The notes under the pieces are model-generated. The model was not told where the DNA came from. It saw nothing but the letters and a program-made list of their open reading frames with translations, and did no database searches. The translations under genes and the position numbers were made by a program. Of a DNA stretch of 64,000 nt, positions 1,640 to 54,878 are shown piece by piece. How positions within the stretch are numbered: position 1 is the first letter of the stretch; each line of letters opens with the position of its first letter. The DNA lies in the IMG/VR virus record IMGVR_UViG_3300035703_000010, positions 1 to 64,000 of that record, one strand, 5' to 3'.

Positions 1640-1664
1640 AATTTAATTATTCTTTCTTAGTACG

Positions 1665-6822: not shown

Positions 6823-6875
6823 GAAAGATTACTCCTGCTGTTATAAAAGCTATTAAATGACAAGAGTAAATATTG

Positions 6876-36742: not shown

Positions 36743-36745
36743 TTT

Positions 36746-37768
36746 TTACTTTCTATTAGTTGCAATTTCTTCTATTTTTAAACCTTGAAATTTTTCTAGT
36801 GGCATGTCAATTATGCCAAGATCTTTTAACTTTTCAAGTAATTGTTGCTTTGACATAACGTCATCTGCGCTAGTGTAGGTAAATCTTTTTTCAGAACCAG
36901 CATGATAAGCAGGTCCTATTACAAAATGAGTGTTTATATCTTTTGTTCGAACGGATTCTGATTCATTAACTAAATCTTCATGTTTTTTCTCACCAGGTCT
37001 TAGTCCTATTGTTTTTATAGGTTTATTATATAATGTTGAGAAAATTTCTGCAAGATCCCCAATTCTCATTGAAGGAATTTTTGGTATCCAAGTTTCTCCG
37101 CTATTTCCATTTTGTAAAGCTGATACTATTAGATCTACGCTGTCATCTAAAGTCATAACAAATCTTGTCATGTCAGGATCAGTGACAGTTAAATAATCAG
37201 AACTTTCAGCTTGATATTTAAATAAAGGTATAATGCTTCCTCTAGACTCTAGAACGTTGCCATATCTAGTGCATAAAAATTTGATGTTTGTTAAATCATT
37301 CTTTGATTGAGAAGTAACCAATCTTTCAGATATACCTTTGCACATGCCGTAAACATTGACTGGAGAACAGGCTTTATCGGTACTCACGAATAAAACTTTC
37401 TCTAATTTCCAACTGTCATTAAAATTTGAAGAAAGCTCTTTAACAGACTTTATTACGTTTTGAGTTCCTAAAAGATTTGTTTGAACGCTTTCAAATGGAC
37501 TTAATTCGCATGTATCTACTTGCTTTAAAGCAGCAGCGATAATTATTACTTGAGGTCTATAATGATAAATGACTTCTTTTACTCTAGAAAAATCTCTAAT
37601 ATCTCCTACAAAAAATTCTAAATTTTTTGGATAAGACAATTCATTTTTTATCGTCCAATGTTTTGCTTCATCTCTTGAATAAACAGCTACATCATTATTG
37701 GATGATAAAAATCTAGTAATTAATTTTCTTCCTAAAGAGCCTGTCCCACCAAATATTAGATATTTCAT
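36746..37768 (-). CDS. pseB: UDP-GlcNAc 4,6-dehydratase, PseB/FlaA1-type
   Basis: GGTGSLG, YSRDE.K, AAALKQV, STDKA, YGMCK (YxxxK with Tyr, as in PseB rather than the Met of FnlA/CapE), RYGNV..SRGS, MTRF, GLRPGEK.HE. Confidence 0.8.
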   Translation of the reverse strand: MKYLIFGGTGSLGRKLITRFLSSNNDVAVYSRDEAKHWTIKNELSYPKNLEFFVGDIRDFSRVKEVIYHYRPQVIIIAAALKQVDTCELSPFESVQTNLLGTQNVIKSVKELSSNFNDSWKLEKVLFVSTDKACSPVNVYGMCKGISERLVTSQSKNDLTNIKFLCTRYGNVLESRGSIIPLFKYQAESSDYLTVTDPDMTRFVMTLDDSVDLIVSALQNGNSGETWIPKIPSMRIGDLAEIFSTLYNKPIKTIGLRPGEKKHEDLVNESESVRTKDINTHFVIGPAYHAGSEKRFTYTSADDVMSKQQLLEKLKDLGIIDMPLEKFQGLKIEEIATNRK

Positions 37769-37800
37769 TTTTATATTGTATTTTTTTACAAAAACGTTGT

Positions 37801-38637
37801 TTAAAGTTTAACAACACTTTCAAACGAAATATCAAAAAGTTCATCAGTTCTTGTCGGTTTATAATCAATAGACAAATTGTAATTTCTGCTTCCATTTATA
37901 ACTAGATGAGGGTTTTCATTTCCTAGTTTAGAGTGCCAAATTCCACCATCTATAATTGCTGACTTTTGATACTTTTTATAATAAATTTTTTGATAATCTG
38001 TTTCATTAAACTTTTTAAGATTGAAAAGTTCAAAAAAAACTTCTTTCATTGTTTGCATTCTTGTAAGAGAAGGAAGTTTTGGTAAAAAATTGCAAGTGTA
38101 TATCTCGTGATCTTTATCAACAAGATTAAACTCTACTTTTTTATTTTCTATGAAATTATCTTGAACCACCCACGCGTATCTTTTGGAGTCTTTGTTTATA
38201 TTTCTTTTATCATATAAGTTTCTTTTTGAAACGGAAAATTCTTCAGTCCTTACAAATCCAACATCATTATGCTTGTTTAAAAACTCTTCACAATGTTTTA
38301 ACTTGCTGAATGCATCATCAAAATGAATAATGTCTGATTCTATTATGTAAAGATACTTGTAATCTTTATTCATTATTTTTTGGTAATTTTTTAAACACCA
38401 AAAAATAGCGCTCCAAAATCCAATATTAGTTTTACTTTTAAGAACGTTTTTAAAGTTGTCTTTTAAAAGATCTATACTTCCTGGATAAGTAGAATCATTA
38501 TCAAATACTAAAAGATCTTTCTTTAAATCATCATCTAAAAGACTTGAAAGATTATTTACGACTTGCTTCAACACTTCAAATCTAGTGCTTTCTTTCGTAC
38601 ATGTTACTAAAAGAATTAGTGTATCATTCATAAACAC
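37801..38637 (-). CDS. Putative glycosyltransferase family 2
   Basis: LLVFDNDS, NIGF..A, YLYIIESD motifs. Confidence 0.75.
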   Translation of the reverse strand: MFMNDTLILLVTCTKESTRFEVLKQVVNNLSSLLDDDLKKDLLVFDNDSTYPGSIDLLKDNFKNVLKSKTNIGFWSAIFWCLKNYQKIMNKDYKYLYIIESDIIHFDDAFSKLKHCEEFLNKHNDVGFVRTEEFSVSKRNLYDKRNINKDSKRYAWVVQDNFIENKKVEFNLVDKDHEIYTCNFLPKLPSLTRMQTMKEVFFELFNLKKFNETDYQKIYYKKYQKSAIIDGGIWHSKLGNENPHLVINGSRNYNLSIDYKPTRTDELFDISFESVVKL

Positions 38638-39757
38638 CTTTTAGAAATTTTTCCCAAACTTCCCAGTAATAATCATTAAAAATTTTAAGATTCATTTCTT
38701 CCATCCCAAATTTTAAGCTCCTTTCATAACCTGGATCTTTTAAAATTTTTTCTATTGCTTCTGCAGCTTCATTTGGAGTTTCAACAATAACTGAGTTAAT
38801 TTTGTCTACTAAATAGTTTGTAGAATTAGATGAAAGAACATATTTTTTTGTTGTAATAATAGGAATTCCTGAGTTTAAACAATAATAAAAAACTCCGCCG
38901 CCCCAATCAGTTTGTTTGAAGTGTACTGCTGCTTTTAAATTTTTAGTAATTTTATAAGATTGCCTTGGAGAAATTGTCGAAAATTTACCAGTTACGCCAT
39001 TTTTTTCAGAAAATCTTATATCTGCGCCGGCTGACCGAATGTTTCCTCCAAAATTTTTTACTTCTTCAACGTTTTTTTCTTTTAAAATTAAATTCATTTT
39101 AACAAAAAACTTGTAGTCATCTGGTTGCCTGACTTCAAAATTATGATTAAATGATGCAAATTGTAATGAATCTACAACATTAAACTCGCTATCTATGTCT
39201 AACAATTTAGTTTCAAAATCTACGCAAAAAACATTAACGTTATTAACGTTCGTATGTTTAGATTCATAGTTAGCTGGAATAAACTTAGCTACGTTTTTTG
39301 GTCTGTGATTTCCAGGATCATGGTTCCATGCATTCATTGTTGATGAAACCCATTTTGCGTTTGGAAAATATTCGTTAGCTACCTTGAAGTAATGTAATAA
39401 ACTTTCTTCGCCTCCTCTTAAAGTATGAAAAATTTCTATTCCGGGATTTTTTTCATTTAAATCTATTATTTCGCAAGATATGTCTTCATCATATAAGCAA
39501 CATGATTTAAATGTTTTCAGAAAAAAATCTTCTCCAAAAAATGCATTGTTTTCCTGGAATGGATAAAGATCAAGATTTCTTTTGCTTTTATCAATTGAAG
39601 ATTTGCACAATAAGATAGGCCATGTAGCTATTTTTTCCCATTTAAGTCCTAAAGTGCCAGGTTTTGGTACAAAAACTTTATGGCCTAACTTTGAATAATG
39701 ATAGATCATAGATGTTAATCCACTTCTATCATCAGTTGGAAAAATAAAAATATTCAT
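38624..39757 (-). CDS. Putative glycosyltransferase (divergent GT-B)
   Basis: KLGHKVF; C-terminal AVHFK..DWGGG.FYY.L..GIPII...D..N..IVET..EAAEAI. Confidence 0.7.
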   Translation of the reverse strand: MNIFIFPTDDRSGLTSMIYHYSKLGHKVFVPKPGTLGLKWEKIATWPILLCKSSIDKSKRNLDLYPFQENNAFFGEDFFLKTFKSCCLYDEDISCEIIDLNEKNPGIEIFHTLRGGEESLLHYFKVANEYFPNAKWVSSTMNAWNHDPGNHRPKNVAKFIPANYESKHTNVNNVNVFCVDFETKLLDIDSEFNVVDSLQFASFNHNFEVRQPDDYKFFVKMNLILKEKNVEEVKNFGGNIRSAGADIRFSEKNGVTGKFSTISPRQSYKITKNLKAAVHFKQTDWGGGVFYYCLNSGIPIITTKKYVLSSNSTNYLVDKINSVIVETPNEAAEAIEKILKDPGYERSLKFGMEEMNLKIFNDYYWEVWEKFLKGVYE

Positions 39758-39775
39758 ATTATTTCTTTTATTAGA

Positions 39776-40687
39776 TTAAAAATCAAATTCTGGTCCTTCT
39801 AACAAAACCTTGCTTTGAGGATATTTTTTTTGATCTCCATTTTCAGTCTGATAAGTCCATCCAATAGGATTGCATACATCAACAAAACTTAAAGGAGCGA
39901 AAGAATCTTGTTTTTTATAATACTCTTCTGGAGAAATTTTTTCATAATATTCTCCAGAAGAAGAAGGAGCATCTAAATAATACCCATATCGTTTATTGCC
40001 TCGTATGAAAGCGTATCCTCCTCTTGGGTCGTTCCATACAGGGGCAAATAAAGGAACCCAACTGCAATAATTCAATTGCAAATTAGGCAATTTTGATTTT
40101 AAATGAGAATCGTACCAGTCTTCTGATCTACCCCAAAATTCTTGAGTTTGTGGCCAATCAACTGGATAATTTCCAAACTTTTCAAAAATTTCTTTTTTAA
40201 AGAAACCCATAGTCGGAAAGTGGTTATCTAACGGCAAATAGTATTTGTAGTTTTTATTTTTTATTACTAAATTTTTATTAAATTTATTTTGAATAGTGGA
40301 TCTTCTAACCGCGTTAACTTCCAGAGAAAGCATTTCTTTAGAAGAATAGAAATCTTCTACAACTTTTTCTAAAACTTCTTTATTGCCAATAAATTGTAAA
40401 TCATCTTGAAGAAACAAGATTACATCATGCTTTGCATTTTCTATGATAATGTTTTTTGCAATATATTCATCATTAACCCAATTTCTTTCTTCAGGACTTC
40501 TAGAAAATAGTTGATGAATAACCCCGCTTTTTTTCTGCTCTTCAAGATATTCTTTAAGACCATGTTCTATGCTACAATTGTCAACAGCAATAACTTGATG
40601 ATCATTAGAAATTTCTTTTATGCTATTAAAAAGAGATTTTGTGTATTTTAAACGATTAAACGTTGTTATTCCAATTGTTATGTTCAC
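39776..40687 (-). CDS. Glycosyltransferase family 2
   Basis: ITIGITTFNR, IAVDNCS, ILFLQDD. Confidence 0.88.
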   Translation of the reverse strand: MNITIGITTFNRLKYTKSLFNSIKEISNDHQVIAVDNCSIEHGLKEYLEEQKKSGVIHQLFSRSPEERNWVNDEYIAKNIIIENAKHDVILFLQDDLQFIGNKEVLEKVVEDFYSSKEMLSLEVNAVRRSTIQNKFNKNLVIKNKNYKYYLPLDNHFPTMGFFKKEIFEKFGNYPVDWPQTQEFWGRSEDWYDSHLKSKLPNLQLNYCSWVPLFAPVWNDPRGGYAFIRGNKRYGYYLDAPSSSGEYYEKISPEEYYKKQDSFAPLSFVDVCNPIGWTYQTENGDQKKYPQSKVLLEGPEFDF

Positions 40688-40696
40688 TTTTTAACC

Positions 40697-41584
40697 TCAG
40701 CTTAAAATAATCTTCCAAAACGATTCCATAGATTCTTTCCACTTTGGAGGAGTTTTAGAATTTTTTAAAAAATTTCTTTTTGATAATATCTGTTCAATTT
40801 CAAAGAAATTTTTATAAACATGTTGTTTACCTACAAATTCAACGGCGCCGCCTCCTTCAGCATGAACGTATGTTGGAAGTCCAACTGCAATTGATTCTAA
40901 AACGTGATTAGGTCCAGGATCATGTCTAGACGCGCTAACATAAACGTCATATTTACATAATTCATCAGCTAAAGCTTTTCCGTATAGCGGAGGTATCGTT
41001 TTTGAATTAGAAAAAGTTCCTCTATCTCTTCCTATATACGTGAATGATATTTTATCGTTTTTAGTACTTAAGTAATCTAAAAATTCGTAAACATCAAAAC
41101 CTTTTAAGTAGTTATTAGACCAATGATGAGTTACAATTTTTAAAACATCATCATTCTTTTCTTGATAATTTGTATTAAAAAAATCTTCATCAACTCCGTT
41201 ATATAAAACGGATTGATTTTTGCAAATCCACCCTTTGTTATTAAAGTAATTTTTCATCCAATTACTTACAAAAATAGTTTTTGTATTAATCGCGCTACAT
41301 TGTAATAACAATTGATCCATATGTTCTGTGTTTTTTCTTGCGTCACATTCATTAATCCTTTGAATGACGGGTATTTTTTTTCTTGATATAAATTTTGCAG
41401 CATCATTTATATCGAATGATTTATCTCTTCGAGGATCGACCAAAAAAATTAGATCAGTATCATCAGTTAACTTATCAGTTAATTCAACTCCATCTGGAAC
41501 AGATGAATAAACTGCTTTAACAAAATTATTGCCACCGCCGTACGGTCCAGAAATAGGAGCTCTATTAATTGCAATTTTAACCAT
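40697..41584 (-). CDS. Glycosyltransferase family 4-like
   Basis: GPYGGG, YNGVD, KG.D, DVYVSASRHDPGPNHVLES.AVGLP. Confidence 0.85.
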   Translation of the reverse strand: MVKIAINRAPISGPYGGGNNFVKAVYSSVPDGVELTDKLTDDTDLIFLVDPRRDKSFDINDAAKFISRKKIPVIQRINECDARKNTEHMDQLLLQCSAINTKTIFVSNWMKNYFNNKGWICKNQSVLYNGVDEDFFNTNYQEKNDDVLKIVTHHWSNNYLKGFDVYEFLDYLSTKNDKISFTYIGRDRGTFSNSKTIPPLYGKALADELCKYDVYVSASRHDPGPNHVLESIAVGLPTYVHAEGGGAVEFVGKQHVYKNFFEIEQILSKRNFLKNSKTPPKWKESMESFWKIILS

Positions 41585-41603
41585 TCATAAAATTTTATAA
41601 ATT

Positions 41604-42506
41604 TTATAATGATTGTATCAAAGTTCTATAAGGATCATATCCTTTAGGAAGTTTCCATTCTTCTACGTCTGGTATGCTAGGAATTGCAAAAGTTACATCG
41701 TCTGAAATTGACGATTGAGGTAAAATTTGAGAAGCAATTCCTATGTTTCTAGAAACCACTGGAATGTTTAAAAGACCGCATTCAATAAGCGATTGTGGAC
41801 CTCCTTCGCATCTAGCAGTTACAGGATATAAATCTAATGTTTGATATAGCTCATTAATCGTTTTTTGATCTGGTCTATCGAAATATGTAAATGAAATATT
41901 CGACGCAGTTAATCGATTGATAATATACTGCCTTCTCCATCCTGCTAAAACTACATGTAAATTTTGTTTTTCTTTTGACCATTTTTCTATTGCGTCAGCT
42001 AGAAGATCTGGTCCTTTTTCTAGTTTTGGAGAAATTAAGTCTTTACCTTCTGTATCTCTTTGAAATGATCCAATTAAAAATCCATTTTCAGGTAAATTAT
42101 GTTTTTTTCTTAGACTTTGTTTTTCTTCTGTTTGATACCAAATATTTTGATTTGCCCAATACTTTAATAAGTGAATAGGCTTAGAAGTAAACTTTCTAAT
42201 AAAGTCTGACGTTTGTTCATTGTAAACATGATATGCTGTAGTAATTTTATCTCTTAACAAAAAATTATGAACGTCAATGTCTTTAAACTTTTCTGGAACT
42301 ATATGATGTACTGTCGTTAGAACTTTTTTATTTTTTAATAGTCCTTTAAAAAACATTTGTTCCCAACACCAATCAGCAAGTAGCCAAACAACATCAGCGT
42401 CTTTGGGATTTAACACGCTGATATCTTTGTTGTCTTCATTCCACTCTTTTACAAAACGGTCAACAATCCAGTCTTCTGATGGCGGGAGGACATACACTTT
42501 ATTCAT
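41604..42506 (-). CDS. Glycosyltransferase family 4-like
   Basis: IGSFQRD, KGPD, DLYPVTARCEGGPQSLIEC....PVVS. Confidence 0.85.
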   Translation of the reverse strand: MNKVYVLPPSEDWIVDRFVKEWNEDNKDISVLNPKDADVVWLLADWCWEQMFFKGLLKNKKVLTTVHHIVPEKFKDIDVHNFLLRDKITTAYHVYNEQTSDFIRKFTSKPIHLLKYWANQNIWYQTEEKQSLRKKHNLPENGFLIGSFQRDTEGKDLISPKLEKGPDLLADAIEKWSKEKQNLHVVLAGWRRQYIINRLTASNISFTYFDRPDQKTINELYQTLDLYPVTARCEGGPQSLIECGLLNIPVVSRNIGIASQILPQSSISDDVTFAIPSIPDVEEWKLPKGYDPYRTLIQSL

Positions 42507-43438
42507 GAATGTAAAACGCTTTCTAAAAACGAAAGATAATCATTTAATGTTCGTTGCATTGAAACATCAAAACAGTGAGATAAATCATTCTTATGGGGTA
42601 AACGATTCTTTATTTGTGCTACGTCAATTTTAGGAGGATTATCGTAGTCAGTTAGTTCAAAGTTATATTCTTTTTCTTCTTTTAAAATAACTCCATACCC
42701 CTGAACTAGTTCTTTTGTTCCTCCATGTTCAGAACAAATAACTGGTGTTCCTTGTGATAAGGATTCTACTACAGTATTTGGACAATGGTCTAACCATGCA
42801 AGATGTAACATCCAATTAGCTGCAGAAAATATTTCTAAACAAACTTCGTGGGGTTGAGATCCTGCATAAAAAACGTGAGGATCAGCGACTTTTATTGGAT
42901 TAGATCCTAAAACTATAAGAGCAGCTGAAGAATAAAAATTTCTTAAATGTTTATATAACTCTATGTTTTGTAACAAACGTTTTTGAGGATGCCAATTTGC
43001 AGAACATACGAATAACATTTCGTATTGTTGTCTAATTTGTTCTAATACAGGTATTTGAAATTTTTTAATTTCTGGTGCATTAATACCGTTTCGAATTATT
43101 TCGAATTTTTTTGGATATCCCCACCACTTCGTAGTCATGCCTTTATCAAATGCTGACTGCCATATTACAGCATCAGCTGATTGATAAAGCTTTTTTATAG
43201 AAGAGTTTTTTGTTTCAAACTCTTCAGGAGAAAACCAAATTCCATCAAGCCTTTGAACAACTTTTTTTGCTAATGGTCTGCCAGTAGGTTCAATAAAAAC
43301 TATTGAAATTTCAGCTTTTCTACCATCATATAATTCAACTTCATGACCAGATTCTATTAACGCCATAGCTAATCTCTTTCCAAAAGAATTTGGACCAGAG
43401 TTTGAGCTCATATTAACGTTGTCAAGATGTATTTTCAT
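42503..43438 (-). CDS. Glycosyltransferase family 4-like
   Basis: SGP.SF..RL, IRNGI, KRL, LHLAWLDHCPNTVVESLSQGTPVICSEHGGTKELV. Confidence 0.88.
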   Translation of the reverse strand: MKIHLDNVNMSSNSGPNSFGKRLAMALIESGHEVELYDGRKAEISIVFIEPTGRPLAKKVVQRLDGIWFSPEEFETKNSSIKKLYQSADAVIWQSAFDKGMTTKWWGYPKKFEIIRNGINAPEIKKFQIPVLEQIRQQYEMLFVCSANWHPQKRLLQNIELYKHLRNFYSSAALIVLGSNPIKVADPHVFYAGSQPHEVCLEIFSAANWMLHLAWLDHCPNTVVESLSQGTPVICSEHGGTKELVQGYGVILKEEKEYNFELTDYDNPPKIDVAQIKNRLPHKNDLSHCFDVSMQRTLNDYLSFLESVLHS

Positions 43439-43800
43439 GATCTCTTTTTTACTTCAGCAATAAAAGGAATTGCAAATGGAGTCTTATTAAACATCATTGC
43501 CATCAAAGCAATTTCTTTTGTTTCTATGTTAGAAAGACTAGCTCTTTGCGTAAATATATTTGGATCTAACTCTTGATTTCCATTTATAGTTACAGCATCA
43601 TAATACATCTGTGCTATAAAATTTACAGATTCATTAGTCAAAGGAACTGAAGATTCTTTAATGATTTCAGATAAAGAAAAGAAAATATCTTGATAAATTT
43701 CTGAACAAATTTGTGGTGTTAGTTTTTCACCTTTTCTTTTAAATAAGCGTTCAGATAAAAGCTTAGAAATAGATTCATGAAGAGCTTCGCCTTGCATCAT
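43435..43800 (-). CDS. Hypothetical protein within glycosylation island
   Basis: 121 aa helical ORF with ATGA overlaps on both sides. Confidence 0.7.
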   Translation of the reverse strand: MMQGEALHESISKLLSERLFKRKGEKLTPQICSEIYQDIFFSLSEIIKESSVPLTNESVNFIAQMYYDAVTINGNQELDPNIFTQRASLSNIETKEIALMAMMFNKTPFAIPFIAEVKKRS

Positions 43801-44531
43801 TTTACATACCCTCTGTTCCTTAAAAAAACAGCTTCATCCCTTTGAAATATAGCATCATTTGTTTGATATGTTTCAGGAACATCATTAATTGTGTAATGAT
43901 ACATTACTCTAGGTAAGAAAAATCTTTTTTTAGAATTATGAAGAGCTGGTAAATAAATTGCTTGATCTCCTGCTCTTCTGATATAACTTCCATCTTCTCC
44001 TCTATAGTTTTCATCTTTTACTTCATTTAGTAATTTTTTTCTAAATGTTTTTAAATGACTAGAAACCCAAGCATGTTTATACGGATCAACTTCTTGTGAC
44101 ATTGGACAACTTATGTTTTTGTCACTAAATCCCCAACGATGAGCTGTCCATAAAGTATCACATGAAGTTTGAACATAAGCAGAATTGATTATCATCAAAC
44201 AATCAGAATCTGTTAGCCAGTCATCTGCATCAATTCTACAGACGATGTCTTCATCATCACACATTGATAACCCTTGTAATACATTTGCAACTTCCCATTT
44301 TTTTTCAGAGTTCCAAATATTAATGATTCTATTTTGATAAGTTTTTCCTAAGATATTTTTAAAATCATCACAAATTTGAAGAGATTTTTTTGAATGATTT
44401 TCTGAAGACACATCATCGATTAAAATAATTTTCCAATTATCATATGATTGACCGCAAATAGAATGAAGCATTCTGGGTAATGTTTCAGACGCATTATACA
44501 TTGGAGAAATAAACACAAATCTATTATTCAT
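43797..44531 (-). CDS. Glycosyltransferase family 2
   Basis: FISPMYNA, SI..QSY.NW.IILIDD.S, RIDADDWL. Confidence 0.9.
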   Translation of the reverse strand: MNNRFVFISPMYNASETLPRMLHSICGQSYDNWKIILIDDVSSENHSKKSLQICDDFKNILGKTYQNRIINIWNSEKKWEVANVLQGLSMCDDEDIVCRIDADDWLTDSDCLMIINSAYVQTSCDTLWTAHRWGFSDKNISCPMSQEVDPYKHAWVSSHLKTFRKKLLNEVKDENYRGEDGSYIRRAGDQAIYLPALHNSKKRFFLPRVMYHYTINDVPETYQTNDAIFQRDEAVFLRNRGYVK

Positions 44532-45238
44532 TTCATCATCTCATTTGCTTTTTTATAAGATTCATGCGTACCAGCATCTATCCAACCAGTTTCAACATTT
44601 GTGAAAGTTCCAATTCTGTTTTTTACCATGAAAGAGTTTATGTCGCTTACTTCATATTCTCCTCTTGCTGATGGTTTTAAACTTTTAATAACATTAAAAG
44701 CTTCTGGAGTGTAGCAATATACTCCGACTATAGCATCATTGCAAGTTGGATGTTTAGGTTTTTCAACTACATCGGCTATTTTTCCATTTTGATAAACTGG
44801 AATTCCGAATCTTTCTGGATCATGTACTTTTTTAGTAAACAACGCATAGTCATCGTTTGAATCGCTAAATTTTTTTATAGAGTTTGTTATTTTTGAGTAG
44901 TTTTCAAAAATATTGTCTCCTAAGATTGTTACAAATTTTTGATTTCCGACGAATCCTTCGCATAATTGAATTGCTGAAGCAATTCCGTTAGCTACTTCTT
45001 GTATGCAGTAATAAATTGAGCATCCATATTCAGTTCCGGAACCAAGCAACATGGCGAATTGTCCAATGTGCTCTTGTCTAGTAATAATGCAAATTTCCTT
45101 GATACCAGATTCTACTAAAAGATTTATAGAATGAATTATCATAGGCTTTTCGCCTACTGGAAGTAGACATTTACTGGTAAATTTTGTTAAAGGCTGAAGT
45201 CGACTGCTAATCCCTCCAGTTAGAATAATTCCTTTCAT
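44528..45238 (-). CDS. Sugar-1-phosphate nucleotidyltransferase, short RmlA/SpsI-like
   Basis: MKGIIL.GG..SRL.PLT....K.LLPV..KPMI, GIA.A, LGDNIF, PERFG, EKP, PS.RGE.E, W.DAGT.ES...AN. Confidence 0.9.
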   Translation of the reverse strand: MKGIILTGGISSRLQPLTKFTSKCLLPVGEKPMIIHSINLLVESGIKEICIITRQEHIGQFAMLLGSGTEYGCSIYYCIQEVANGIASAIQLCEGFVGNQKFVTILGDNIFENYSKITNSIKKFSDSNDDYALFTKKVHDPERFGIPVYQNGKIADVVEKPKHPTCNDAIVGVYCYTPEAFNVIKSLKPSARGEYEVSDINSFMVKNRIGTFTNVETGWIDAGTHESYKKANEMMK

Positions 45239-47175
45239 TTTTTATTCCTGTTTAACATGATTTTTGGTTGCGCTTTTTCAACTGTTAAATGAGGAGTTGT
45301 AGTTTTGCCATCCCATTTTTGATGCCAAATCCATCCGCCTAATTTTTCTTTAAGCTCTTTAGCTCTTTTTTCAATCATTTCGTCAGTAACTTCTTGCCAA
45401 GGATGATCAAACATCATATTTGAAGCTGAAGTATCTTCGTATTTTTTACCAGATAATGATTCCCAATGTTTTGTCCAATAATCTTTATATAATTTGATCT
45501 TTCTTTCAAGATTATACCAGCTATAATGAAAAACGCCTGGTAAATTATTAACGACATTATTAAACCAAGCATTATAGTCTTTTAATGCTTTTTGATTTCC
45601 TAATAATGCAGATCTTCTTATTTGATCTGCTTCTGCAGTATAGAATGTAACATGATTGATTCTATTTCCAGTTTTAGAATCAATCATGTCGCAACCATCT
45701 GTACCTTCAGCTGCATACAAATCTCCGTTAGAGTCATATCTTCTAAGTTCAACAGGAATGCCATGAGTTATGTTTTGCTTATTTCTACTTAACCTCCACT
45801 TCCAAGGCATGATATCAAGTCGAACCTTTTCAGGACCACCCCAATACTCAATGACTGGTAATGATATTAAATCAACATTTGCTGGAAACTTTGAACACAA
45901 ATCAATTATTTTTTCTGCATCTGACTCATGAACAATTTCATCTGAATCCATTTGCCAACAGAAAGTTGATTTACACATGGATCTTGCTTCTGCTTTTTGC
46001 ATTCCATCAAACACTGCAAATCGTGGATGGTTCCAATCTCTATGAATTTGTTTTATGACAATCTTGTCATTTTTTTCAGATAATTCTTTTAGTTTTTCCC
46101 ATGTGCCGTCAGAAGAACCTCCATCTACAACACATACTTCTTCGCAAAATTGAAGCATAGATTCGATGCATTCTACAAAAGGATAGTCTTGTTTAATGCA
46201 ATTATATACAGTTGTGTATCCACTTATAGATGGCTTATAATCCATCATCTTCTTTATTCCATTCCAAAAAATTGTTGGAGCTGTAAAAAGATATTCTTCA
46301 ATTTCTTTGATGTTTTCTGTATTAAACCATTCTTCATCTTTGTGTTGAACGTTATCATTAAGATGAAGCTTACATCCTAACAATTTTGCTTCTATAACCA
46401 TTCTTGGACACGTATCTTTTCCTTCAGGAAGATATACAAATCCTTCTGCTTTCGAAAACCTATTTAGCATTTCATCATATGAAATATTCCAAACTACGTC
46501 ATGCTCTTTTTTATTTTCTTGGCACCAAAGTTTCGCATTTTTAGCTCCTTTTACCCAAGAATCTGATCCAAGTACTATCCAAGATTTTCTAGGCGTAGAA
46601 GATGAATTAGATTGTTCTCTAAGAAGCTTGATCATTCCTAGAGTATTTTTTGAAAATACGCTGGATAAAACAATGTTCGTTTTTTCTAATAAAAATGGGA
46701 ATAAATTTAGATACCACTCTTTTTGAGCTTCTGACATCCACCATAGTCCTCTAGAACCATAGTAGAAAGCTGATATCAATTTTCCATTAAGTTGTTCTTG
46801 ACAATCGCAATCTTTTCCTGATGCTGATTTATGTTTTTCTGGGGATCTATATCGACAGTATTTATAGTCGTATTCTAATATGCTATATTTTAAATTTCCT
46901 ATGATGGTAGGAATTAATTCTGGATTCAATTGAGCAAAATTTCCAAATATCCAGAATTTGTCGACGCCTTGTTTAAGAAGATCTAAACTTAAATCTTTTG
47001 ATAAAATTTTTGTGTACGGAAGAGGACATTCATCTATTAAAGCTTGAGTTGTTAATTCTGCTCCTCCGACATAATGCTCTGCAAAAAGATCAGCAACAAA
47101 AATTATCTTTGCATCTTGTGGGATAGATAAATCTATCATTTTTGTGCTAAAAATACTTTCATTAAAGTTATTCAA
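45235..47175 (-). CDS. Bifunctional glycosyltransferase (GT-B + GT2 fusion)
   Basis: N-half: GGAELT, FVYLP.GKDTCPRMVIEAKLLGC; C-half: ISGYTTVYN, VVDGGSSDGT, QMDSDE. TTG start with GAGGG SD. Confidence 0.88.
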   Translation of the reverse strand: MNNFNESIFSTKMIDLSIPQDAKIIFVADLFAEHYVGGAELTTQALIDECPLPYTKILSKDLSLDLLKQGVDKFWIFGNFAQLNPELIPTIIGNLKYSILEYDYKYCRYRSPEKHKSASGKDCDCQEQLNGKLISAFYYGSRGLWWMSEAQKEWYLNLFPFLLEKTNIVLSSVFSKNTLGMIKLLREQSNSSSTPRKSWIVLGSDSWVKGAKNAKLWCQENKKEHDVVWNISYDEMLNRFSKAEGFVYLPEGKDTCPRMVIEAKLLGCKLHLNDNVQHKDEEWFNTENIKEIEEYLFTAPTIFWNGIKKMMDYKPSISGYTTVYNCIKQDYPFVECIESMLQFCEEVCVVDGGSSDGTWEKLKELSEKNDKIVIKQIHRDWNHPRFAVFDGMQKAEARSMCKSTFCWQMDSDEIVHESDAEKIIDLCSKFPANVDLISLPVIEYWGGPEKVRLDIMPWKWRLSRNKQNITHGIPVELRRYDSNGDLYAAEGTDGCDMIDSKTGNRINHVTFYTAEADQIRRSALLGNQKALKDYNAWFNNVVNNLPGVFHYSWYNLERKIKLYKDYWTKHWESLSGKKYEDTSASNMMFDHPWQEVTDEMIEKRAKELKEKLGGWIWHQKWDGKTTTPHLTVEKAQPKIMLNRNKK

Positions 47176-47300: not shown

Positions 47301-47933
47301 ATGAGGTTGTATATGCCTAGGGGAAAAAATAGCGAAAAAAGTAATTCACTTATGAAAAAAGCTGGACGTCCTAGGAAATATCAATCTTCTGTAGAAGAAG
47401 TTGAACAAGGCTCAGAACATTCAAAAAAAGCTATTGAAACTATTGAAAATAGTTATAAACAAATCATGGAAATGCAAGATAGAATCTTGTCAGCCCCAGC
47501 GATGAATGGTGGATTTACAACTTTGATGTATAAGGTTGAGAACATAGAAAAATCTCAAAGCCAGCTGGTACAAAAAGTTGATCAAATTCATGGAGTTCTT
47601 TACGAACCTGACACAGGCTTGTATGCCAGGCTAAAAAAAGTAGAAAATGATTGCGCTCCAAACGAAATGATAGATGAAATCGAAAAAGATATTCAAGAAA
47701 TAAAGCTTTGGAAAAACTCAGAAGAAAAGCAATCTGAAAAAGAAGAAGTTAAAGACGTAGAAAAAGAAAAAATCTTATCCGATCATGAGACGACAATAAA
47801 AGATCTACAAAGAAGCATAAACAAATACAATGCAGCAACGAAATGGATTGCTGTATCTTTAGGCGGCGGCATAATAAGCATGATTATTAAACTCATATAT
47901 GAATATGTTAGTGGTCACGTAAAAATAGTTTGA
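47301..47933 (+). CDS. Coiled-coil protein with C-terminal membrane anchor
   Basis: Basic N-terminus, long heptad pattern, C-terminal WIAVSLGGGIISMIIKLIYEYV hydrophobic helix. Confidence 0.7.
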   Translation: MRLYMPRGKNSEKSNSLMKKAGRPRKYQSSVEEVEQGSEHSKKAIETIENSYKQIMEMQDRILSAPAMNGGFTTLMYKVENIEKSQSQLVQKVDQIHGVLYEPDTGLYARLKKVENDCAPNEMIDEIEKDIQEIKLWKNSEEKQSEKEEVKDVEKEKILSDHETTIKDLQRSINKYNAATKWIAVSLGGGIISMIIKLIYEYVSGHVKIV

Positions 47934-47966: not shown

Positions 47967-49166
47967 ATGTCAGTTTTTCTAAACGAAGAAGTATCTTTAA
48001 AGATATCTTACGTTTTTAAAAAGCTTAAAGAAATTATTGAAAATTCAAAAAATTCTATATCATCAAAAAAAGAAAAAGTTTTGTTTAAAACAGACATACA
48101 GGCATGTTTAAACTATAAGTTTGAAGATGCTTTAGAAGAATCTATTAAAAAAATTATAATTGATCATGCTTTTAAAGCAGAGCAATTATCTCCTGGTTCT
48201 TTTAAAGAAACTATTTTAATTTCTAATGATTTATTGATGAATGAAAATAGAAATGAACATGATGTAAAAGTTTCATTCCATCCAAAATTAGAAGATTTAA
48301 AAAAAATAATTGATGTGTTTTCTACAGATGAAGTTGTTTCAGCTTTATGTTTTGAAGCTATAAATTTATCTGGATTTGGCGGAAAAATTTCTATAGAAAA
48401 AAGTTTAAATTCTGAGACGTCTGTTGAACTTATTGACGGATATTCGTTTAAACATGATAACTTAGGAATTCATCCAATAAAAATAAAAAAGCCTAGAATT
48501 ATTTGCATTGATGGATATATCGAATCTGTTTCTGAAGCAAACTTATTGTTTGAAGGAGCTGTGCAATTAAAACATCCACTAATTCTAGTTTGTAGAGGAA
48601 TGAGTGATGAAGTTCTTCAAACAATAAAAGTTAACAAGGATAGAAAAACTATGTTTATTTATCCTATTAAAATACCTTTTGATTTGCAAGGAATTAATAC
48701 AATAGCTGATATTAGCACTGTGATAGGATTAAATCCAGTATCTTGTAATTTAGGTGATCTTATATCTGCTACAAAAATAGAAGATTCGGTAGAAATAGAT
48801 GAGATTTTTATTACTGGAAATTCTTTAATAATAAAGAATTCAAAAACTAGAAAAAATGTTAACTTACATTTAAGATCTTTAATAGAAAAAAGACATTCTT
48901 CGAATGTTGATGTAGAAGAGTTATTAACAGTTAGAATAAAATCATTATCCAATAATTGTGTAATTATAAGATTGCCTAATGATTCAAAGTATGTATCAAC
49001 TTCTCAATCAATTGATTATGTACTTAGGTCAGTAAAATCTATGCTAGATTATGGGATATTTTTTGACAATAATAAAATTAAACTTTATGGAAGTCGCCAA
49101 TTTTCTATTGACATGTCGAAAAAACTTTATTCTTTAATAAAAAACATTCATGCATTTTTAGAGTAA
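47967..49166 (+). CDS. Truncated, ATPase-degenerate GroEL/Cpn60-like protein
   Basis: Colinear similarity to GroEL intermediate/apical domains (EAI..G..G.I.IE......VELIDG..F; P.I..IDG.I; PL.L......E.L.T...N; DI....G; E.L..RI..L....IIR); GDGTTT replaced by PGSFKET; only 399 aa. Confidence 0.8.
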   Translation: MSVFLNEEVSLKISYVFKKLKEIIENSKNSISSKKEKVLFKTDIQACLNYKFEDALEESIKKIIIDHAFKAEQLSPGSFKETILISNDLLMNENRNEHDVKVSFHPKLEDLKKIIDVFSTDEVVSALCFEAINLSGFGGKISIEKSLNSETSVELIDGYSFKHDNLGIHPIKIKKPRIICIDGYIESVSEANLLFEGAVQLKHPLILVCRGMSDEVLQTIKVNKDRKTMFIYPIKIPFDLQGINTIADISTVIGLNPVSCNLGDLISATKIEDSVEIDEIFITGNSLIIKNSKTRKNVNLHLRSLIEKRHSSNVDVEELLTVRIKSLSNNCVIIRLPNDSKYVSTSQSIDYVLRSVKSMLDYGIFFDNNKIKLYGSRQFSIDMSKKLYSLIKNIHAFLE

Positions 49167-49507: not shown

Positions 49508-49984
49508 ATGGCTATCTTTGGTCAAAAACACTTAATAAAGTGTAGATGCGTATTACCACAGTTTAAAAACTCTTCAGACCCAGAGAAAAAACAACATAGA
49601 TTCACTGTTTTTTCAGAAATTGTTGATGATGTTGTTAAACAAAAATTTTCTCAATGTAACAATTGCGGTCTTATTCATAAAGTTACAGATATATGCACTT
49701 CTGAAATAATGTCAGGTAAAGAAGCAATGTCATCAATTTTAACAATTGAAGATATAAAGTCGGGTCTTCATCCTTCTTTAACTTCAATTCTTGAAAGATA
49801 TCAATGTGATTTACCTACATGGGAACAAGCACAATTTATTACGGAAAATAAGCGTTGGGGTGAAATAATCATCTTAACTAGCGACGTTGAAGATGACTCT
49901 AAAGTTATAAAATATCTTAGAGTTTTAGGGGAAACTTTATTTAAAGTTGATTCTCATTCTAGAAAAGAAACATTAGGTGTTTGA
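49508..49984 (+). CDS. Hypothetical Zn-binding protein
   Basis: CRC ... CNNC...H....C cysteine pattern. Confidence 0.65.
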   Translation: MAIFGQKHLIKCRCVLPQFKNSSDPEKKQHRFTVFSEIVDDVVKQKFSQCNNCGLIHKVTDICTSEIMSGKEAMSSILTIEDIKSGLHPSLTSILERYQCDLPTWEQAQFITENKRWGEIIILTSDVEDDSKVIKYLRVLGETLFKVDSHSRKETLGV

Positions 49985-50225
49985 TATGCATTATGGACAA
50001 TTATCTTCAGAAAAATCAGCTAAAGAAAATGAAGATTGCAGAAGAATTGTAAAAGAAATTTTAAATGTAGGATTGACTCAACGTCAACATATGTTTCTTA
50101 TTTATTTACTTTCTCTTGAATTAGAAAACATTGAATACGTACAAGCTTTAGCGGATACTATTAAAGAAATAGCTGGAGATCAGATTTTTATTTCAAAGAG
50201 AGAAGAAAATGGGACGAACAGTTGA
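49977..50225 (+). CDS. Hypothetical small helical protein
   Basis: 82 aa; overlaps both neighbours. Confidence 0.6.
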   Translation: MFDMHYGQLSSEKSAKENEDCRRIVKEILNVGLTQRQHMFLIYLLSLELENIEYVQALADTIKEIAGDQIFISKREENGTNS

Positions 50226-50814
50226 ACCTCAAAATTTGCGAACCGCTCATTCAGGAAAAACAAACTCAGATGGGCAAGATGCTGCTATATTAATGTCTCC
50301 AAGCGAAGATTCTAGAATAGTAGTTCTTTATGGAGGAGTAAGCGAGCAATCAATAGCTGCAACTATAGTTCAACTTCTTTATTTAGCAAATCAAAATCAT
50401 AAACCAATTCATCTTGTAGTTTCTACTTATGGCGGATCAGTTGATGAGATGTTTTCTCTTTATGACACTATTAAGTTTTTACCATGTCCAGTTCACACTA
50501 TCGCTCTAGGCAAAGTTATGTCTGCCGGCGTTCTATTGTTGGCCTCGGGCGTCAAAGGCAAAAGAATGATTGGTTCATCTGCTAGACTTATGATGCATCC
50601 AATTTCAGGCGGATTTTATGGAAACGTTTTTGAATCAGTAAATGAGACAAATGAACATAAGAGACTTCATCATTTAATGACTACAGCTCTTCAAGATGAA
50701 ACAAAGATGACAGTTGAGCAAATTGAATCGATCATGAAGTCAGGTCATGATTACTATCTGACCCCTGAAGATGCGATAAAGTTAGGAATCGTCGACAAAA
50801 TCATCGGCAAATGA
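50209..50814 (+). CDS. clpP: ClpP-family serine protease
   Basis: GGSV, KVMSAG (catalytic Ser), KR...SSARLMMHP (His), HDYYLTPEDA.KLG.VD (Asp). Confidence 0.92.
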   Translation: MGRTVEPQNLRTAHSGKTNSDGQDAAILMSPSEDSRIVVLYGGVSEQSIAATIVQLLYLANQNHKPIHLVVSTYGGSVDEMFSLYDTIKFLPCPVHTIALGKVMSAGVLLLASGVKGKRMIGSSARLMMHPISGGFYGNVFESVNETNEHKRLHHLMTTALQDETKMTVEQIESIMKSGHDYYLTPEDAIKLGIVDKIIGK

Positions 50815-52553: not shown

Positions 52554-52754
52554 ATGTCAGAAAATGAAGTTTTAGCAAAGTGGTCAGATCTTAAATCTCT
52601 AGTAGAAGCTCTAGAGCATGATGTTGCAAAGAACGCAAAAGGTACTGCAGCTGCAGGCGTTAGAGTAAGAAAAGGTCTTAGAGATTTAAAGGTAAAAGCA
52701 GGAGAACTTGTTAAGTTAACTCTTACTTTAGACAAGACCAAGAAAAAGGATTGA
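52554..52754 (+). CDS. Histone H1-like protein Hc1 family
   Basis: L..L.E.LE.D.AK...G..AAG.R.RK.L..LK....ELVK pattern; strong SD AGGAGG. Confidence 0.75.
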   Translation: MSENEVLAKWSDLKSLVEALEHDVAKNAKGTAAAGVRVRKGLRDLKVKAGELVKLTLTLDKTKKKD

Positions 52755-53513: not shown

Positions 53514-54878
53514 ATGACAAAAACATATGTTTTAGATACAAACGTCTTGCTAAGTGATCCTGATAGCATTCATAGCTTTGAAGATAATGATTTATTGATT
53601 CCAATTTTAGTTTTAGAGGAATTAGATAAACATAAAACTAGAAATGATGATGTAGGAAGAAACGCTAGACAGGTAAGCAGAATGCTAGATTCCATGAGAA
53701 ATGAATCTAGTTTTCATGATGGAGTTAAAACTCGTGGTGGAGGAACTATAAAAATAGTTTCTTCAGAGGATGATCCACGTTCTCTTTTACCAAAGGAATT
53801 ATTAAAAAGCTCCAGTTTGGATAACATGATCATTGGATTCATGCTAACTCAAAAAGACAAGAATCTAGTTCTTGTTTCTAAAGATATAAACATAAGAGTT
53901 AAATGTGATGCTTTAGGTCTTAAGTGTCAAGACTATTTAAACATGAGAGTTTCATCAGACATAGATGAACTTTACAGAGGCGTGAAGCTTGTTCATGTTA
54001 ATGAAGACATCGTTGATTCTTTTTACAAAGATGGAAAGATTCAAAAATCAGATGCAACAGATGAACAAACTTATCCAAATCAAATCGTTATTTTAAAAAC
54101 AGTTGACGATAGAGGAAACACTATTAAGTCTGCTATGTCACGCTTTCATGAAGATGGAACTTTAAGATCATTAGCAAAAATTGATAGCGTGTTTGGATTG
54201 AGACCTAGAAATAAAGAACAACTTTTTTCTTTAGACTTACTCATGGATGAAAACATAAAACTTTTATCCATGATAGGTAAAGCCGGTTGCGGTAAAACAC
54301 TATTAGCTATAGCAGCTGGATTAGAACAATTAAATTCTATAGGTTCACAATCAAAATATCAAAAGTTGATTGTGTCTCGTCCAGTTCAACCCGTTGGAAA
54401 AGACATCGGTTACTTACCAGGAACATTAGAAGAAAAAATGGAACCATGGATAGCACCTGTTAAAGACAATCTAGATTTTCTTTTAGGTATTAATGGTAAG
54501 AAACCTGGTAGAAAATCAAAAGATAATCTAATGACATCTGATCCTTATCTTGAGTTGATGCAACAAAGAGGATTGATAGAAATTGAAGCGATATCATTTA
54601 TTAGAGGTCGTTCAATTCCAAATGCATTCATTATAATAGATGAAGCTCAAAATTTGTCAATGCATGAATTAAAAACGATCGTAACTCGTGTAGGAGAAGG
54701 AACAAAAATCGTTTTAACTGGAGATATTGAGCAAATTGACAATGTTGACGTCGATGCTTACACGAACGGTCTTACATATGCAATTGAAAAATTTAAAGAA
54801 CATTCAATTGCTGCTCACGTTACTCTTCTAAAAGGAGAAAGAAGTCCATTGGCTACTTTAGCTTCTAAGATTTTGTAA
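53514..54878 (+). CDS. phoH: PIN-PhoH (PhoH2/YlaK-type) protein
   Basis: YVLDTNVLL PIN domain, VLEELD..K, SKD.N.R.K, GKAGCGKT, RP....G..IG.LPG, RGRS, IIDEAQN, GD..QID. Confidence 0.93.
   Translation: MTKTYVLDTNVLLSDPDSIHSFEDNDLLIPILVLEELDKHKTRNDDVGRNARQVSRMLDSMRNESSFHDGVKTRGGGTIKIVSSEDDPRSLLPKELLKSSSLDNMIIGFMLTQKDKNLVLVSKDINIRVKCDALGLKCQDYLNMRVSSDIDELYRGVKLVHVNEDIVDSFYKDGKIQKSDATDEQTYPNQIVILKTVDDRGNTIKSAMSRFHEDGTLRSLAKIDSVFGLRPRNKEQLFSLDLLMDENIKLLSMIGKAGCGKTLLAIAAGLEQLNSIGSQSKYQKLIVSRPVQPVGKDIGYLPGTLEEKMEPWIAPVKDNLDFLLGINGKKPGRKSKDNLMTSDPYLELMQQRGLIEIEAISFIRGRSIPNAFIIIDEAQNLSMHELKTIVTRVGEGTKIVLTGDIEQIDNVDVDAYTNGLTYAIEKFKEHSIAAHVTLLKGERSPLATLASKIL

What the first reader, a model, noticed from the sequence alone, without database searches (positions are those of the whole stretch)
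47967..49166. ATPase-dead, truncated GroEL: a possible phage minichaperone or GroEL modulator
Seen: clear colinear similarity to GroEL across the intermediate and apical domains. The ATP loop GDGTTT reads PGSFKET, the VEDALH segment carrying catalytic D398 reads IDYVLR, and about 120-150 C-terminal residues (mostly equatorial) are missing. Established: characterised phage chaperonins (phiEL, OBP) are full-length ATPases, and isolated apical domains act as ATP-independent minichaperones. Inference: an ATP-independent holdase for the giant virion proteins, a subunit that reprogrammes host GroEL rings, or a repurposed scaffold.
Basis: partly seen in the sequence, partly recalled or inferred. Interest (0 to 1): 0.68.

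Follow-up and report, generated by a model that had tools for sequence, protein, structure and literature searches.

The report
ATPase-dead mini-GroEL paralog of jumbo phages
A large uncultivated freshwater phage encodes, besides a normal GroEL chaperonin, a second, shrunken GroEL copy that has lost every ATP-binding element. This copy is strictly conserved in a whole clade of such phages, so it is a working chaperonin-derived protein with a new, still untested job.

Summary
ORF 47967-49166 (+, 399 aa) is a GroEL homolog by sequence (PHROG 1e-17; family profile vs PDB GroEL 4e-24) and by fold (AF2 pLDDT 86.7; Foldseek 3e-25; VIA Z 25.8 over the whole chain). The phosphate loop, D398 and the GGG loop are all replaced. 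This holds in all 72 aligned relatives.

It is not a simple C-terminal truncation. The equatorial domain is cut to about 136 of about 243 residues on both sides of the intermediate and apical core, and the terminal helix and strand appear to be kept.

It is not a pseudogene. There are 87 relatives of 28-86% identity and nearly constant length, dN/dS is 0.07-0.18, and synteny is fixed in 38 viral contigs. No relative turned up in cultured phages or in 185,579 prokaryotic genomes.

The same phage (204.6 kb record, about 60% complete), an 84%-complete relative and a complete relative each also carry an intact full-length GroEL. None carries GroES.

Two of the five helix H/I groove hydrophobics are conserved polar or basic residues (L234 to N/H, V263 to K/R), a third (L259) varies, and the Y199/Y203/F204 segment is unconserved or deleted. 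This argues against a generic holdase.

Best reading: an ATP-independent pseudo-chaperonin with a specific partner. That function is inferred, not shown.

The parts
47967..49166 (+). Gene for the 399-aa GroEL-derived protein (P0001), stop codon included
   Evidence: ORF. GroEL homology by sequence and fold. 87 relatives. dN/dS 0.07-0.18.
47967..48263 (+). aa 1-99: N-terminal remnant of the equatorial domain. GroEL has 128 residues here. One long helix (D or E) is missing.
   Evidence: AF2 secondary structure. VIA aligns model residue 1 with GroEL residue 4. hhalign global alignment is colinear with a 31-aa gap. No significant local sequence match.
48180..48212 (+). aa 72-82: degenerate phosphate-loop position. 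E72 is invariant and P76 nearly so. It stands in place of the GroEL segment D83 to T91 (GDGTTT).
   Evidence: Column counts, alignment summary, global hhalign.
48264..48437 (+). aa 100-157: first intermediate-domain segment (about GroEL 134-190)
   Evidence: phmmer, profile and hhalign alignments.
48438..48953 (+). aa 158-329: apical domain (GroEL 192-374)
   Evidence: VIA against isolated apical domains: Z 22.3, rmsd 2.0 A, 172 aligned residues.
48510..48536 (+). aa 182-190: family signature D-G-Y-I-E-S-V-S-E, aligned to GroEL 224-232 and leading into helix H. Almost invariant.
   Evidence: Used as the scan pattern.
48537..48635 (+). aa 191-223: helices H and I. The groove is remodelled: L234 to N/H, V263 to K/R. 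L237 and V264 are kept hydrophobic.
   Evidence: hhalign mapping and column counts.
48954..49052 (+). aa 330-362: second intermediate-domain segment. It includes IDYVLR (aa 349-354, nt 49011-49028), where the catalytic D398 position is Y.
49053..49163 (+). aa 363-399: C-terminal remnant of the equatorial domain (hairpin, one helix, short strand). GroEL has 115 residues plus a tail here.
   Evidence: AF2. VIA ranges: model 394 aligns with chain 513/514, and model 399 with chain 522.
47301..47933 (+). Upstream co-directional gene (210 aa): basic N-terminus, coiled coil, C-terminal hydrophobic helix. 33 nt separate it from the GroEL-like gene.
   Evidence: Translation. Only weak coiled-coil type hits. 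Found next to the gene in 29 of 38 loci. Association only; no interaction is shown.
49508..49984 (+). Downstream 158-aa Cys/His protein, the most constant neighbour (37 of 38 loci)
   Evidence: Association only.
50209..50814 (+). ClpP-like protease, downstream in 31 of 38 loci
   Evidence: PF00574 E 3e-38. NCBIfam ClpP subfamily match at 125.7 bits, below the 249-bit cutoff. Synteny. Association only.

Best explanation
The gene encodes a GroEL-derived 'pseudo-chaperonin'. It is a paralog that keeps the apical and intermediate domains on a minimal equatorial stub.

It cannot bind or hydrolyse ATP in the GroEL manner. It has turned the promiscuous hydrophobic helix H/I groove into a conserved polar and basic surface.

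It most likely acts without ATP as a specific binding or assembly factor for one phage (or host) partner. It would work alongside the phage's own intact, ATP-driven GroEL rather than as a general holdase.

Shown: homology, loss of the nucleotide site, domain reduction, groove substitutions, purifying selection, phage-only distribution, and co-occurrence with a full-length GroEL.

Inferred: ATP independence of the function, specificity of binding, and any oligomeric state.
For: Fold and homology.

Every nucleotide-binding element is lost across the family.
- The D87 position is P in 68 of 72 relatives.
- The D398 position is Y/R/L/N/Q in 60 of 72, with no conserved acidic residue.
- GGG414-416 is variable and the TLGPK loop is deleted.
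- The 479-495 region has no counterpart in the 37-residue C-terminal stub.

Functional constraint.
- 87 relatives of 28-86% identity, nearly all 390-426 aa.
- dN/dS 0.07-0.18 over the whole gene and below 0.28 in each of three regions.
- Of 39 strongly conserved core positions, 21 are shared with GroEL and 18 are family-specific.

Groove.
- L234 to N/H in 71 of 72 relatives.
- V263 to K/R in 61 of 72.
- Y199 is unconserved.
- There is an 8-aa deletion over Y203/F204.

Paralog context.
- An intact GroEL is present in G000, in G002 (84% complete) and in G003 (100% complete, direct terminal repeats).
- Those copies keep all ATP and substrate residues, and the window genome's copy passes the NCBIfam GroEL equivalog cutoff (628 against 582 bits).
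- No Cpn10 was found in the three genomes.

The family is virus-only as far as it was searched.
Against: - No partner is identified.
- The only interaction test, a homodimer, gave no verdict.
- No RNA or protein evidence of expression is available. All 20 runs that hold the stretch appear to be DNA or are untyped, and none is on record as RNA.
- The groove mapping rests on a profile alignment and a predicted model, not on a solved structure.
- L237, V264 and often L259 remain hydrophobic, so some affinity for non-native chains cannot be ruled out.
- Co-occurrence with full-length GroEL rests on only three sufficiently large genome records. Other records are fragments.
Confidence: 0.45

Rival explanations
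1. General ATP-independent holdase (a natural 'minichaperone'). It would keep large or aggregation-prone phage proteins soluble.
For: The apical domain fold is intact (Z 22.3, rmsd 2.0 A). L237 and V264 equivalents remain hydrophobic, and L259 often does. From established knowledge, isolated GroEL apical domains have ATP-independent chaperone activity.
Against: - Two of the five helix H/I groove hydrophobics of GroEL are conserved polar or basic residues, and a third (L259) is variable.
- The Y199/Y203/F204 segment is unconserved or deleted.
- The phage already has a complete GroEL with these residues intact.
Confidence: 0.15
2. Accessory or regulatory subunit of the phage's own full-length GroEL. 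It could co-assemble with it, cap it, or deliver a client to it. This would be comparable to the chaperonin-like BBS6/10/12 proteins that act with CCT.
For: - Both genes are present in all three sufficiently large genomes.
- No GroES is encoded.
- The N-terminal strand, stem-loop hairpin and C-terminal strand form the intra-ring beta-sheet in GroEL. Their counterparts appear to be retained in the model (the ring-sheet role is established knowledge of GroEL structure).
Against: - The two genes lie 87-145 kb apart and are not co-located.
- The equatorial stub shows no sequence similarity to the full-length copy.
- The R197 and E386 positions are lost.
- The pair was not tested.
Confidence: 0.15
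3. Structural or scaffold protein with no chaperone-type activity. The GroEL fold would be reused as a ring or platform, possibly membrane-associated through the upstream tail-anchored coiled-coil protein.
For: - Fixed gene pair with the upstream 210-aa protein, which has a C-terminal hydrophobic helix.
- All enzymatic features are lost.
- The conserved family-specific surface residues fit a fixed interface.
Against: The gene sits among replication and host-takeover type genes (ClpP, helicase, Hc1, PhoH). It is not in the tail/baseplate block at 10-28 kb. There are no virion proteomics.
Confidence: 0.15
4. Modulator or poison subunit of the host GroEL/GroES system.
For: There is no direct evidence. 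The only basis is the general precedent that phages manipulate host GroEL/GroES, for example T4 gp31 (established knowledge).
Against: - The residues GroEL uses to bind the GroES mobile loop are the same groove residues that are lost here.
- The ring-interface salt-bridge positions are lost.
- The equatorial domain is heavily reduced.
Confidence: 0.05
5. Decaying pseudogene or fragment of a GroEL gene.
For: It is shorter than GroEL and lacks the catalytic residues.
Against: - 87 relatives keep the same length down to 28% identity.
- dN/dS is 0.07-0.18.
- The AF2 model is confident.
- The downstream ORFs do not encode the missing part.
Confidence: 0.01

Closest known systems
Group I chaperonin GroEL/Cpn60/Hsp60 (Pfam PF00118, NCBIfam TIGR02348)
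   Same: The three-domain fold is colinear over the whole chain (Z 25.8). 21 of 39 strongly conserved core positions are identical to GroEL.
   Different: - No Pfam hit. 36.6 bits against a 582-bit NCBIfam cutoff.
- All nucleotide-binding loops and D398 are lost.
- The equatorial domain is about 136 instead of about 243 residues.
- There is no GGM tail.
- The substrate/GroES groove is partly polar or basic.
Phage-encoded chaperonins (phage EL gp146, PDB 6tmu/6tmt; AR9 and OBP chaperonins)
   Same: They are phage-borne group I-like chaperonin folds (Z 23.3 to 6tmu_A; AR9 GroEL is the top BFVD hit), and no GroES is encoded alongside.
   Different: - Those are full-length (511-609 aa in BFVD) ATP-dependent machines (PMC7185714, PMC9598537).
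- This phage has such a protein as well, at G000 192928-194439.
- The protein studied here is the additional, ATP-site-less paralog.
Engineered GroEL apical-domain 'minichaperones' (for example PDB 1kid, 1fy9)
   Same: ATP-independent by construction. The apical domain here superposes on such domains.
   Different: Minichaperones act through the native hydrophobic H/I groove, which is altered here. This protein also keeps the intermediate domain and an equatorial stub, all under selection.
Divergent chaperonin paralogs with non-canonical roles: chlamydial variant GroEL2/GroEL3, mycobacterial Cpn60.1, eukaryotic chaperonin-like BBS6/10/12
   Same: Each is a paralog that sits beside a canonical chaperonin and has diverged or lost canonical features. 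There is a weak NCBIfam hit to 'variant chaperonin GroEL3' (E 4e-10). The BBS and Cpn60.1 background comes from PMC5534436 and PMC13673040.
   Different: Those proteins are full-length. The BBS proteins derive from group II. None shows the equatorial reduction seen here, and none is viral.

Membership tests
GroEL/Cpn60 (group I chaperonin) | Equatorial-intermediate-apical three-domain fold | tested here: met
   Foldseek E 2.6e-25. VIA Z 25.8 over residues 1-399.
GroEL/Cpn60 (group I chaperonin) | Passes the curated family model thresholds (PF00118; TIGR02348) | tested here: not met
   No Pfam hit at E <= 1. TIGR02348 gives 36.6 bits against a cutoff of 582.1. The genome's other copy scores 628 bits.
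GroEL/Cpn60 (group I chaperonin) | Nucleotide site: TLGP loop, D52, GDGTTT with D87, D398, GGG414-416, 479-495 segment | tested here: not met
   Replaced or deleted in the protein, with no conserved equivalent in 72 relatives.
GroEL/Cpn60 (group I chaperonin) | Complete equatorial domain carrying the inter-ring contacts (helix D; residues 434-464) | tested here: not met
   Only 99 + 37 residues flank the core. There is one helix after the hairpin.
GroEL/Cpn60 (group I chaperonin) | Hydrophobic substrate/GroES-binding residues Y199, Y203, F204, L234, L237, L259, V263, V264 | tested here: not met
   L234 is N/H, V263 is K/R, Y199 is variable, and Y203/F204 are deleted. L237 and V264 are kept.
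GroEL/Cpn60 (group I chaperonin) | Heptameric ring or tetradecamer assembly | tested here: inconclusive
   The homodimer prediction gave no verdict. This needs experiment.
Phage-encoded full-length chaperonins (EL gp146 type) | Full-length, ATP-hydrolysing chaperonin that works without a co-chaperonin | tested here: not met
   399 aa with the ATP site lost. All BFVD viral matches are 511-609 aa or longer.
Apical-domain minichaperone (functional class) | ATP-independent suppression of aggregation through the hydrophobic H/I groove | not testable with these tools
   Sequence mapping shows that the groove is altered. Activity needs an assay.
New phage family defined here (about 400-aa GroEL-like proteins) | Signature D-G-[YF]-[IV]-E-S-V-S-E, length of about 390-426 aa, and the E72 ... 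P76 motif | tested here: met

The most novel reading that the evidence does not exclude
The protein forms a seven-fold, ATP-independent ring whose remodelled apical face docks on, or feeds, the phage's own seven-fold ClpP.
- A ClpP gene lies 1-2 kb downstream in 31 of 38 loci.
- Each genome has two ClpP paralogs.
- No AAA_2-type (ClpA/ClpB/ClpX-like) ATPase domain was found in the complete genome.

This would be a chaperonin-derived substrate gate for a Clp protease.

An equally unexcluded variant is that it co-assembles with the phage's intact GroEL to make a client-specific hybrid chaperonin.
Probability: 0.05. Interest if true: 0.9.

Novelty: new variant of a known kind. Interest (0 to 1): 0.62.

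Why it matters
Chaperonins are textbook ATP machines. A natural family with the following properties would be a rare, evolution-made dissection of GroEL:
- It is under purifying selection.
- It keeps the apical and intermediate domains on a minimal equatorial stub.
- It has no nucleotide site.
- It has a re-surfaced binding groove.

It could show what the apical and intermediate domains can do without the ATP engine. It could also show how paralogs specialise next to an intact phage GroEL, and which phage process needs a dedicated factor.

No paper found in the literature searches describes such a phage protein. The survey of viral chaperonins considered only full-length GroEL (PMC5649160).

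The family is common in freshwater and groundwater viromes. It is held in 13 studies, and ESM Atlas clusters of 71-244 members are all or nearly all viral.

Tried and rejected
- **Homodimer prediction.** P0001 x 2 with the family alignment gave 'no answer' (score 0.00). It is not evidence either way. The first attempt failed because the machine was busy.
- **Split gene.** The downstream 87-aa and 158-aa ORFs show no similarity to GroEL (hhalign probability 0.2% and 0.1%). Rejected.
- **Hidden co-chaperonin.**
  - PF00166 was not found in G000, G002 or G003.
  - The constant 158-aa neighbour folds confidently (pLDDT 87.5).
  - It has no PDB fold match (best Z 4.8), so nothing suggests a GroES or gp31 fold.
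- **Cultured-phage relatives.** tblastn of P0001 against 50,697 phage records found no match.
- **Cellular relatives.** The signature scan of 185,579 species genomes found none.
- **Origin by duplication inside the lineage.**
  - The family profile scores the lineage's own GroELs at 75-94 bits.
  - E. coli GroEL scores 67 bits, and other bacterial GroELs in the PDB score 84-88 bits.
  - There is no clear signal, so the origin is unresolved. No tree was built because the branch is too long to be informative.
- **Expression.** No run on record as RNA holds the stretch. Read laying was not used because contigs from DNA runs would not address expression.
- **Reverse co-occurrence.** Five contigs with lineage-type GroEL (15-65% complete) contain no truncated paralog. 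They are fragments and the two genes lie up to 145 kb apart, so this is uninformative.
- **Promoter and terminator scan.** The counts did not exceed the shuffled controls.
- **Large profile search.** The search of protein representatives was not run. The word search, the Atlas and the genome scan already answered the distribution question.

Full report
**1. What is at the coordinates**

ORF 47967-49166 on the + strand encodes 399 aa (P0001). Relatives start at the same Met, which supports the start codon.

Pfam finds nothing, even at E <= 1. Other methods do find GroEL:
- PHROG 5725 'chaperonin groEL' matches aa 100-364 at E 1.1e-17.
- phmmer against PDB sequences finds only GroEL/Hsp60 chains, best E 5e-10, with aa 111-337 aligned to GroEL 143-380.
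- NCBIfam GroEL models hit at 24-47 bits, far below their cutoffs of 352-1041 bits.

**2. A conserved family, not a broken gene**

The word-indexed protein search returned 87 relatives.
- They are 86% down to 28% identical, and almost all are 390-426 aa.
- They lie on contigs of up to 295 kb.

A 72-sequence alignment (A1) has ten invariant positions and a near-invariant signature, D-G-Y-I-E-S-V-S-E, at aa 182-190.

Nei-Gojobori dN/dS was computed on five pairs of 75-94% amino-acid identity.
- It is 0.07-0.18 for the whole gene.
- It is below 0.28 in each of three regions: the N-terminal stub, the intermediate plus apical core, and the C-terminal part.

**3. Fold**

AlphaFold2 with A1 gives mean pLDDT 86.7 and pTM 0.74. 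Only aa 29-40 fall below 50.
- Foldseek against the PDB: all of the best 500 matches counted have E <= 0.001, and the 50 listed are all group I chaperonins, best E 2.6e-25.
- VIA-align gives Z 25.8 (rmsd 4.7 A, 399 aligned) to mtHsp60. It gives Z 23-25 to E. coli and T. thermophilus GroEL and Z 23.3 to phage EL gp146.
- The model spans residues 1-399 against chain residues 4-522.
- Isolated apical domains align at Z 22.3 and rmsd 2.0 A (model 158-329 with GroEL 192-374).
- The family profile hits PDB GroEL at E 3.9e-24.
- hhalign against E. coli plus three phage GroELs gives 99.1% probability over aa 120-370 aligned to GroEL 154-417.

**4. What has been lost**

Residue mapping comes from the hhalign alignments.

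Nucleotide site:
- The phosphate loop GDGTTT is replaced. P76 stands at or next to the D87 position in 68 of 72 relatives.
- The D398 position is Y/R/L/N/Q in 60 of 72 relatives, with no conserved acidic residue.
- GGG414-416 is variable and polar.
- The TLGPK loop falls in a gap.
- The 479-495 segment has no counterpart.

Ring-contact positions:
- The R197 position is not conserved as Arg. H is the commonest residue there, in 30 of 72 relatives.
- E386 falls in a gap.

Size:
- The protein is 149 residues shorter than E. coli GroEL.
- The loss is spread over about 31 aa around helices D/E, 8 aa of the Y203/F204 loop, most of the C-terminal equatorial half, and the tail.
- VIA ranges place model residue 394 at chain 513/514 and residue 399 at chain 522.
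- The final helix and strand therefore correspond to the last equatorial helix and strand of GroEL. I read this from alignment ranges only and could not inspect coordinates.
- The N-terminal strand, the stem-loop hairpin (low pLDDT) and the C-terminal strand form the intra-ring sheet in GroEL. This is established structural knowledge.
- All three elements have counterparts in the model. The helices that carry the inter-ring contacts do not.

**5. The apical groove**

GroEL binds non-native chains and the GroES mobile loop through Y199, Y203, F204, L234, L237, L259, V263 and V264 (established knowledge). In the family:

| GroEL residue | State in the family |
|---|---|
| L234 | N or H in 71 of 72 |
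| V263 | K or R in 61 of 72 |
| L259 | variable |
| Y199 | variable |
| Y203/F204 | segment deleted in this protein |
| L237 | stays L or F |
| V264 | mostly V |

Of 39 core positions conserved at 85% or more, 21 equal the GroEL residue and 18 are family-specific. A conserved but no longer hydrophobic groove suggests a defined partner rather than generic unfolded protein. This is an inference.

**6. Genomic setting**

The window is bases 1-64000 of a 204,651-bp IMG/VR virus record that CheckV estimates as 60% complete. Tail and baseplate genes and large ORFs lie at 10-28 kb. A run of sugar-nucleotide and glycosyltransferase genes lies at 35-47 kb on the minus strand.

The gene opens a + strand block:
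- a 210-aa coiled-coil protein with a C-terminal hydrophobic helix
- this gene
- ORFs of 87, 158 and 82 aa
- ClpP
- an XPD/DinG-type helicase
- an Hc1-like histone
- a PIN-PhoH protein

The block is syntenic in 38 IMG/VR contigs, down to 28-30% identity of the GroEL-like protein. It is also syntenic in NCBI metagenome contigs.

The helicase's nearest cultured relatives are jumbo phages, at about 30% identity: Tunturi_5, phage G, XacN1 and RsoM2USA.

Runs holding the DNA come from freshwater, lake, groundwater and subsurface metagenomes in 13 studies. None is on record as RNA.

**7. The intact paralog**

The same record, outside the window, encodes a full-length Cpn60 at 192928-194439 on the minus strand (PF00118 E 1e-67).
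- It keeps every ATP-site, groove and R197/E386 residue, and it lacks a GGM tail.
- It scores 628 bits against the TIGR02348 cutoff of 582.
- The 84%-complete relative G002 and the complete relative G003 (297,894 bp, terminal repeats) also have both genes.
- Smaller fragments have one or the other, which is uninformative.

The lineage's full-length GroELs are 56-68% identical to each other. The truncated paralogs of the same genomes are 32-44% identical to P0001. The paralog therefore evolves faster, but under constraint.

No Cpn10 is found in G000, G002 or G003.

**8. Distribution and prior knowledge**

- There is no tblastn match in 50,697 deposited phage genomes.
- There is no relative in one genome for each of 185,579 prokaryotic species.
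- BFVD holds only full-length viral chaperonins as matches.
- ESM Atlas look-alikes are unnamed clusters of 401-434 aa that are 94-100% viral.
- JGI's pipeline already labels some members 'chaperonin GroEL (HSP60 family)'.
- The literature searches found no description of an ATP-site-less, reduced phage GroEL.
- The virioplankton chaperonin survey analysed only sequences spanning GroEL residues 8-514 (PMC5649160).

**9. Interpretation**

Firm conclusion: this is a selected, phage-specific, GroEL-derived protein without the chaperonin ATP engine, and it coexists with an intact phage GroEL.

Most likely mechanism (confidence about 0.45): ATP-independent, specific binding of a phage or host partner through the remodelled apical face.

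Rivals:
- general holdase
- accessory subunit of the phage GroEL
- structural scaffold
- host GroEL modulator

The single complex prediction allowed was a homodimer, and it gave no verdict. The oligomeric state is open.

No genetic code other than table 11 was used.

Noticed in passing
Outside the window: G000:C1:192928-194439 (-), locus L001:1483-3123: Intact full-length phage GroEL (about 536 aa from the likely ATG start). All ATP-site and groove residues are kept and there is no GGM tail. Orthologs in G002 and G003 are 56-68% identical. No GroES gene was found in any of the three genomes.
   Followed up: yes
window 49508-49984 (+): 158-aa protein with invariant H8, C12, C14, C50, C53 and H57, a probable zinc site. 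It is the most constant neighbour of the GroEL-like gene (37 of 38 loci) and is better conserved than it. The AF2 model is confident (pLDDT 87.5), but there is no PDB fold match (best Z 4.8) and no Pfam, PHROG or NCBIfam hit.
   Followed up: partly
window 50209-50814 (+); G000:C1:173159-173566 (-): There are two ClpP-like genes per genome in G000, G002 and G003. One lies just downstream of the GroEL-like gene, and the other lies 12-20 kb from the full-length GroEL. The window copy appears to keep Ser, His and Asp at the expected motifs. It resembles bona fide ClpP (125.7 bits) more than ClpP-type head-maturation proteases (48.5 bits). No AAA_2 (ClpA/ClpB/ClpX-type) ATPase domain was found in these genomes.
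   Followed up: partly
window 1-8500: GC content is 42-45% here, against about 27-36% in the rest of the window. The region holds three large minus-strand ORFs (1252, 451 and 534 aa) without Pfam hits, one of which has a PHROG of unknown function. Possibilities are a recently acquired island, differently evolving structural genes, or an assembly join. None was examined.
   Followed up: no
window 35603-47175 (-): A long co-directional run of sugar-nucleotide and glycan genes. It includes a DegT-type aminotransferase, a Polysacc_synt_2 dehydratase, an NTP transferase, and several GT1 and GT2 glycosyltransferases, among them a 646-aa GT2. It is partly syntenic in relatives, where the 646-aa GT2 is found in 30 of 38 loci. 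The target of the glycosylation is unknown.
   Followed up: partly
window 47301-47933 (+): 210-aa protein directly upstream, separated by a 33-nt gap. It has a basic, AT-hook-like N-terminus, a long coiled coil and a C-terminal hydrophobic helix, giving a tail-anchored appearance. It is found next to the GroEL-like gene in at least 29 of 38 loci.
   Followed up: partly
window 52554-52754 (+) and 53514-54878 (+): An Hc1-type histone H1-like protein (PF07432, E 1.7e-10) and a PIN-PhoH fusion (PF13638 + PF02562). Both are conserved in the block across the clade.
   Followed up: no
window, 25 nt upstream of 33 genes: Only 11 of 33 genes have even a loose Shine-Dalgarno-like motif, and A/T-rich leaders dominate. 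This is compatible with a host that uses Shine-Dalgarno sites little, such as Bacteroidota, but the host was not determined. No tRNA genes are present in the window.
   Followed up: partly
window 3-947 (+) and 8608-9150 (+): An ATP-dependent DNA ligase that runs off the window start, and a NADAR-domain protein.
   Followed up: no
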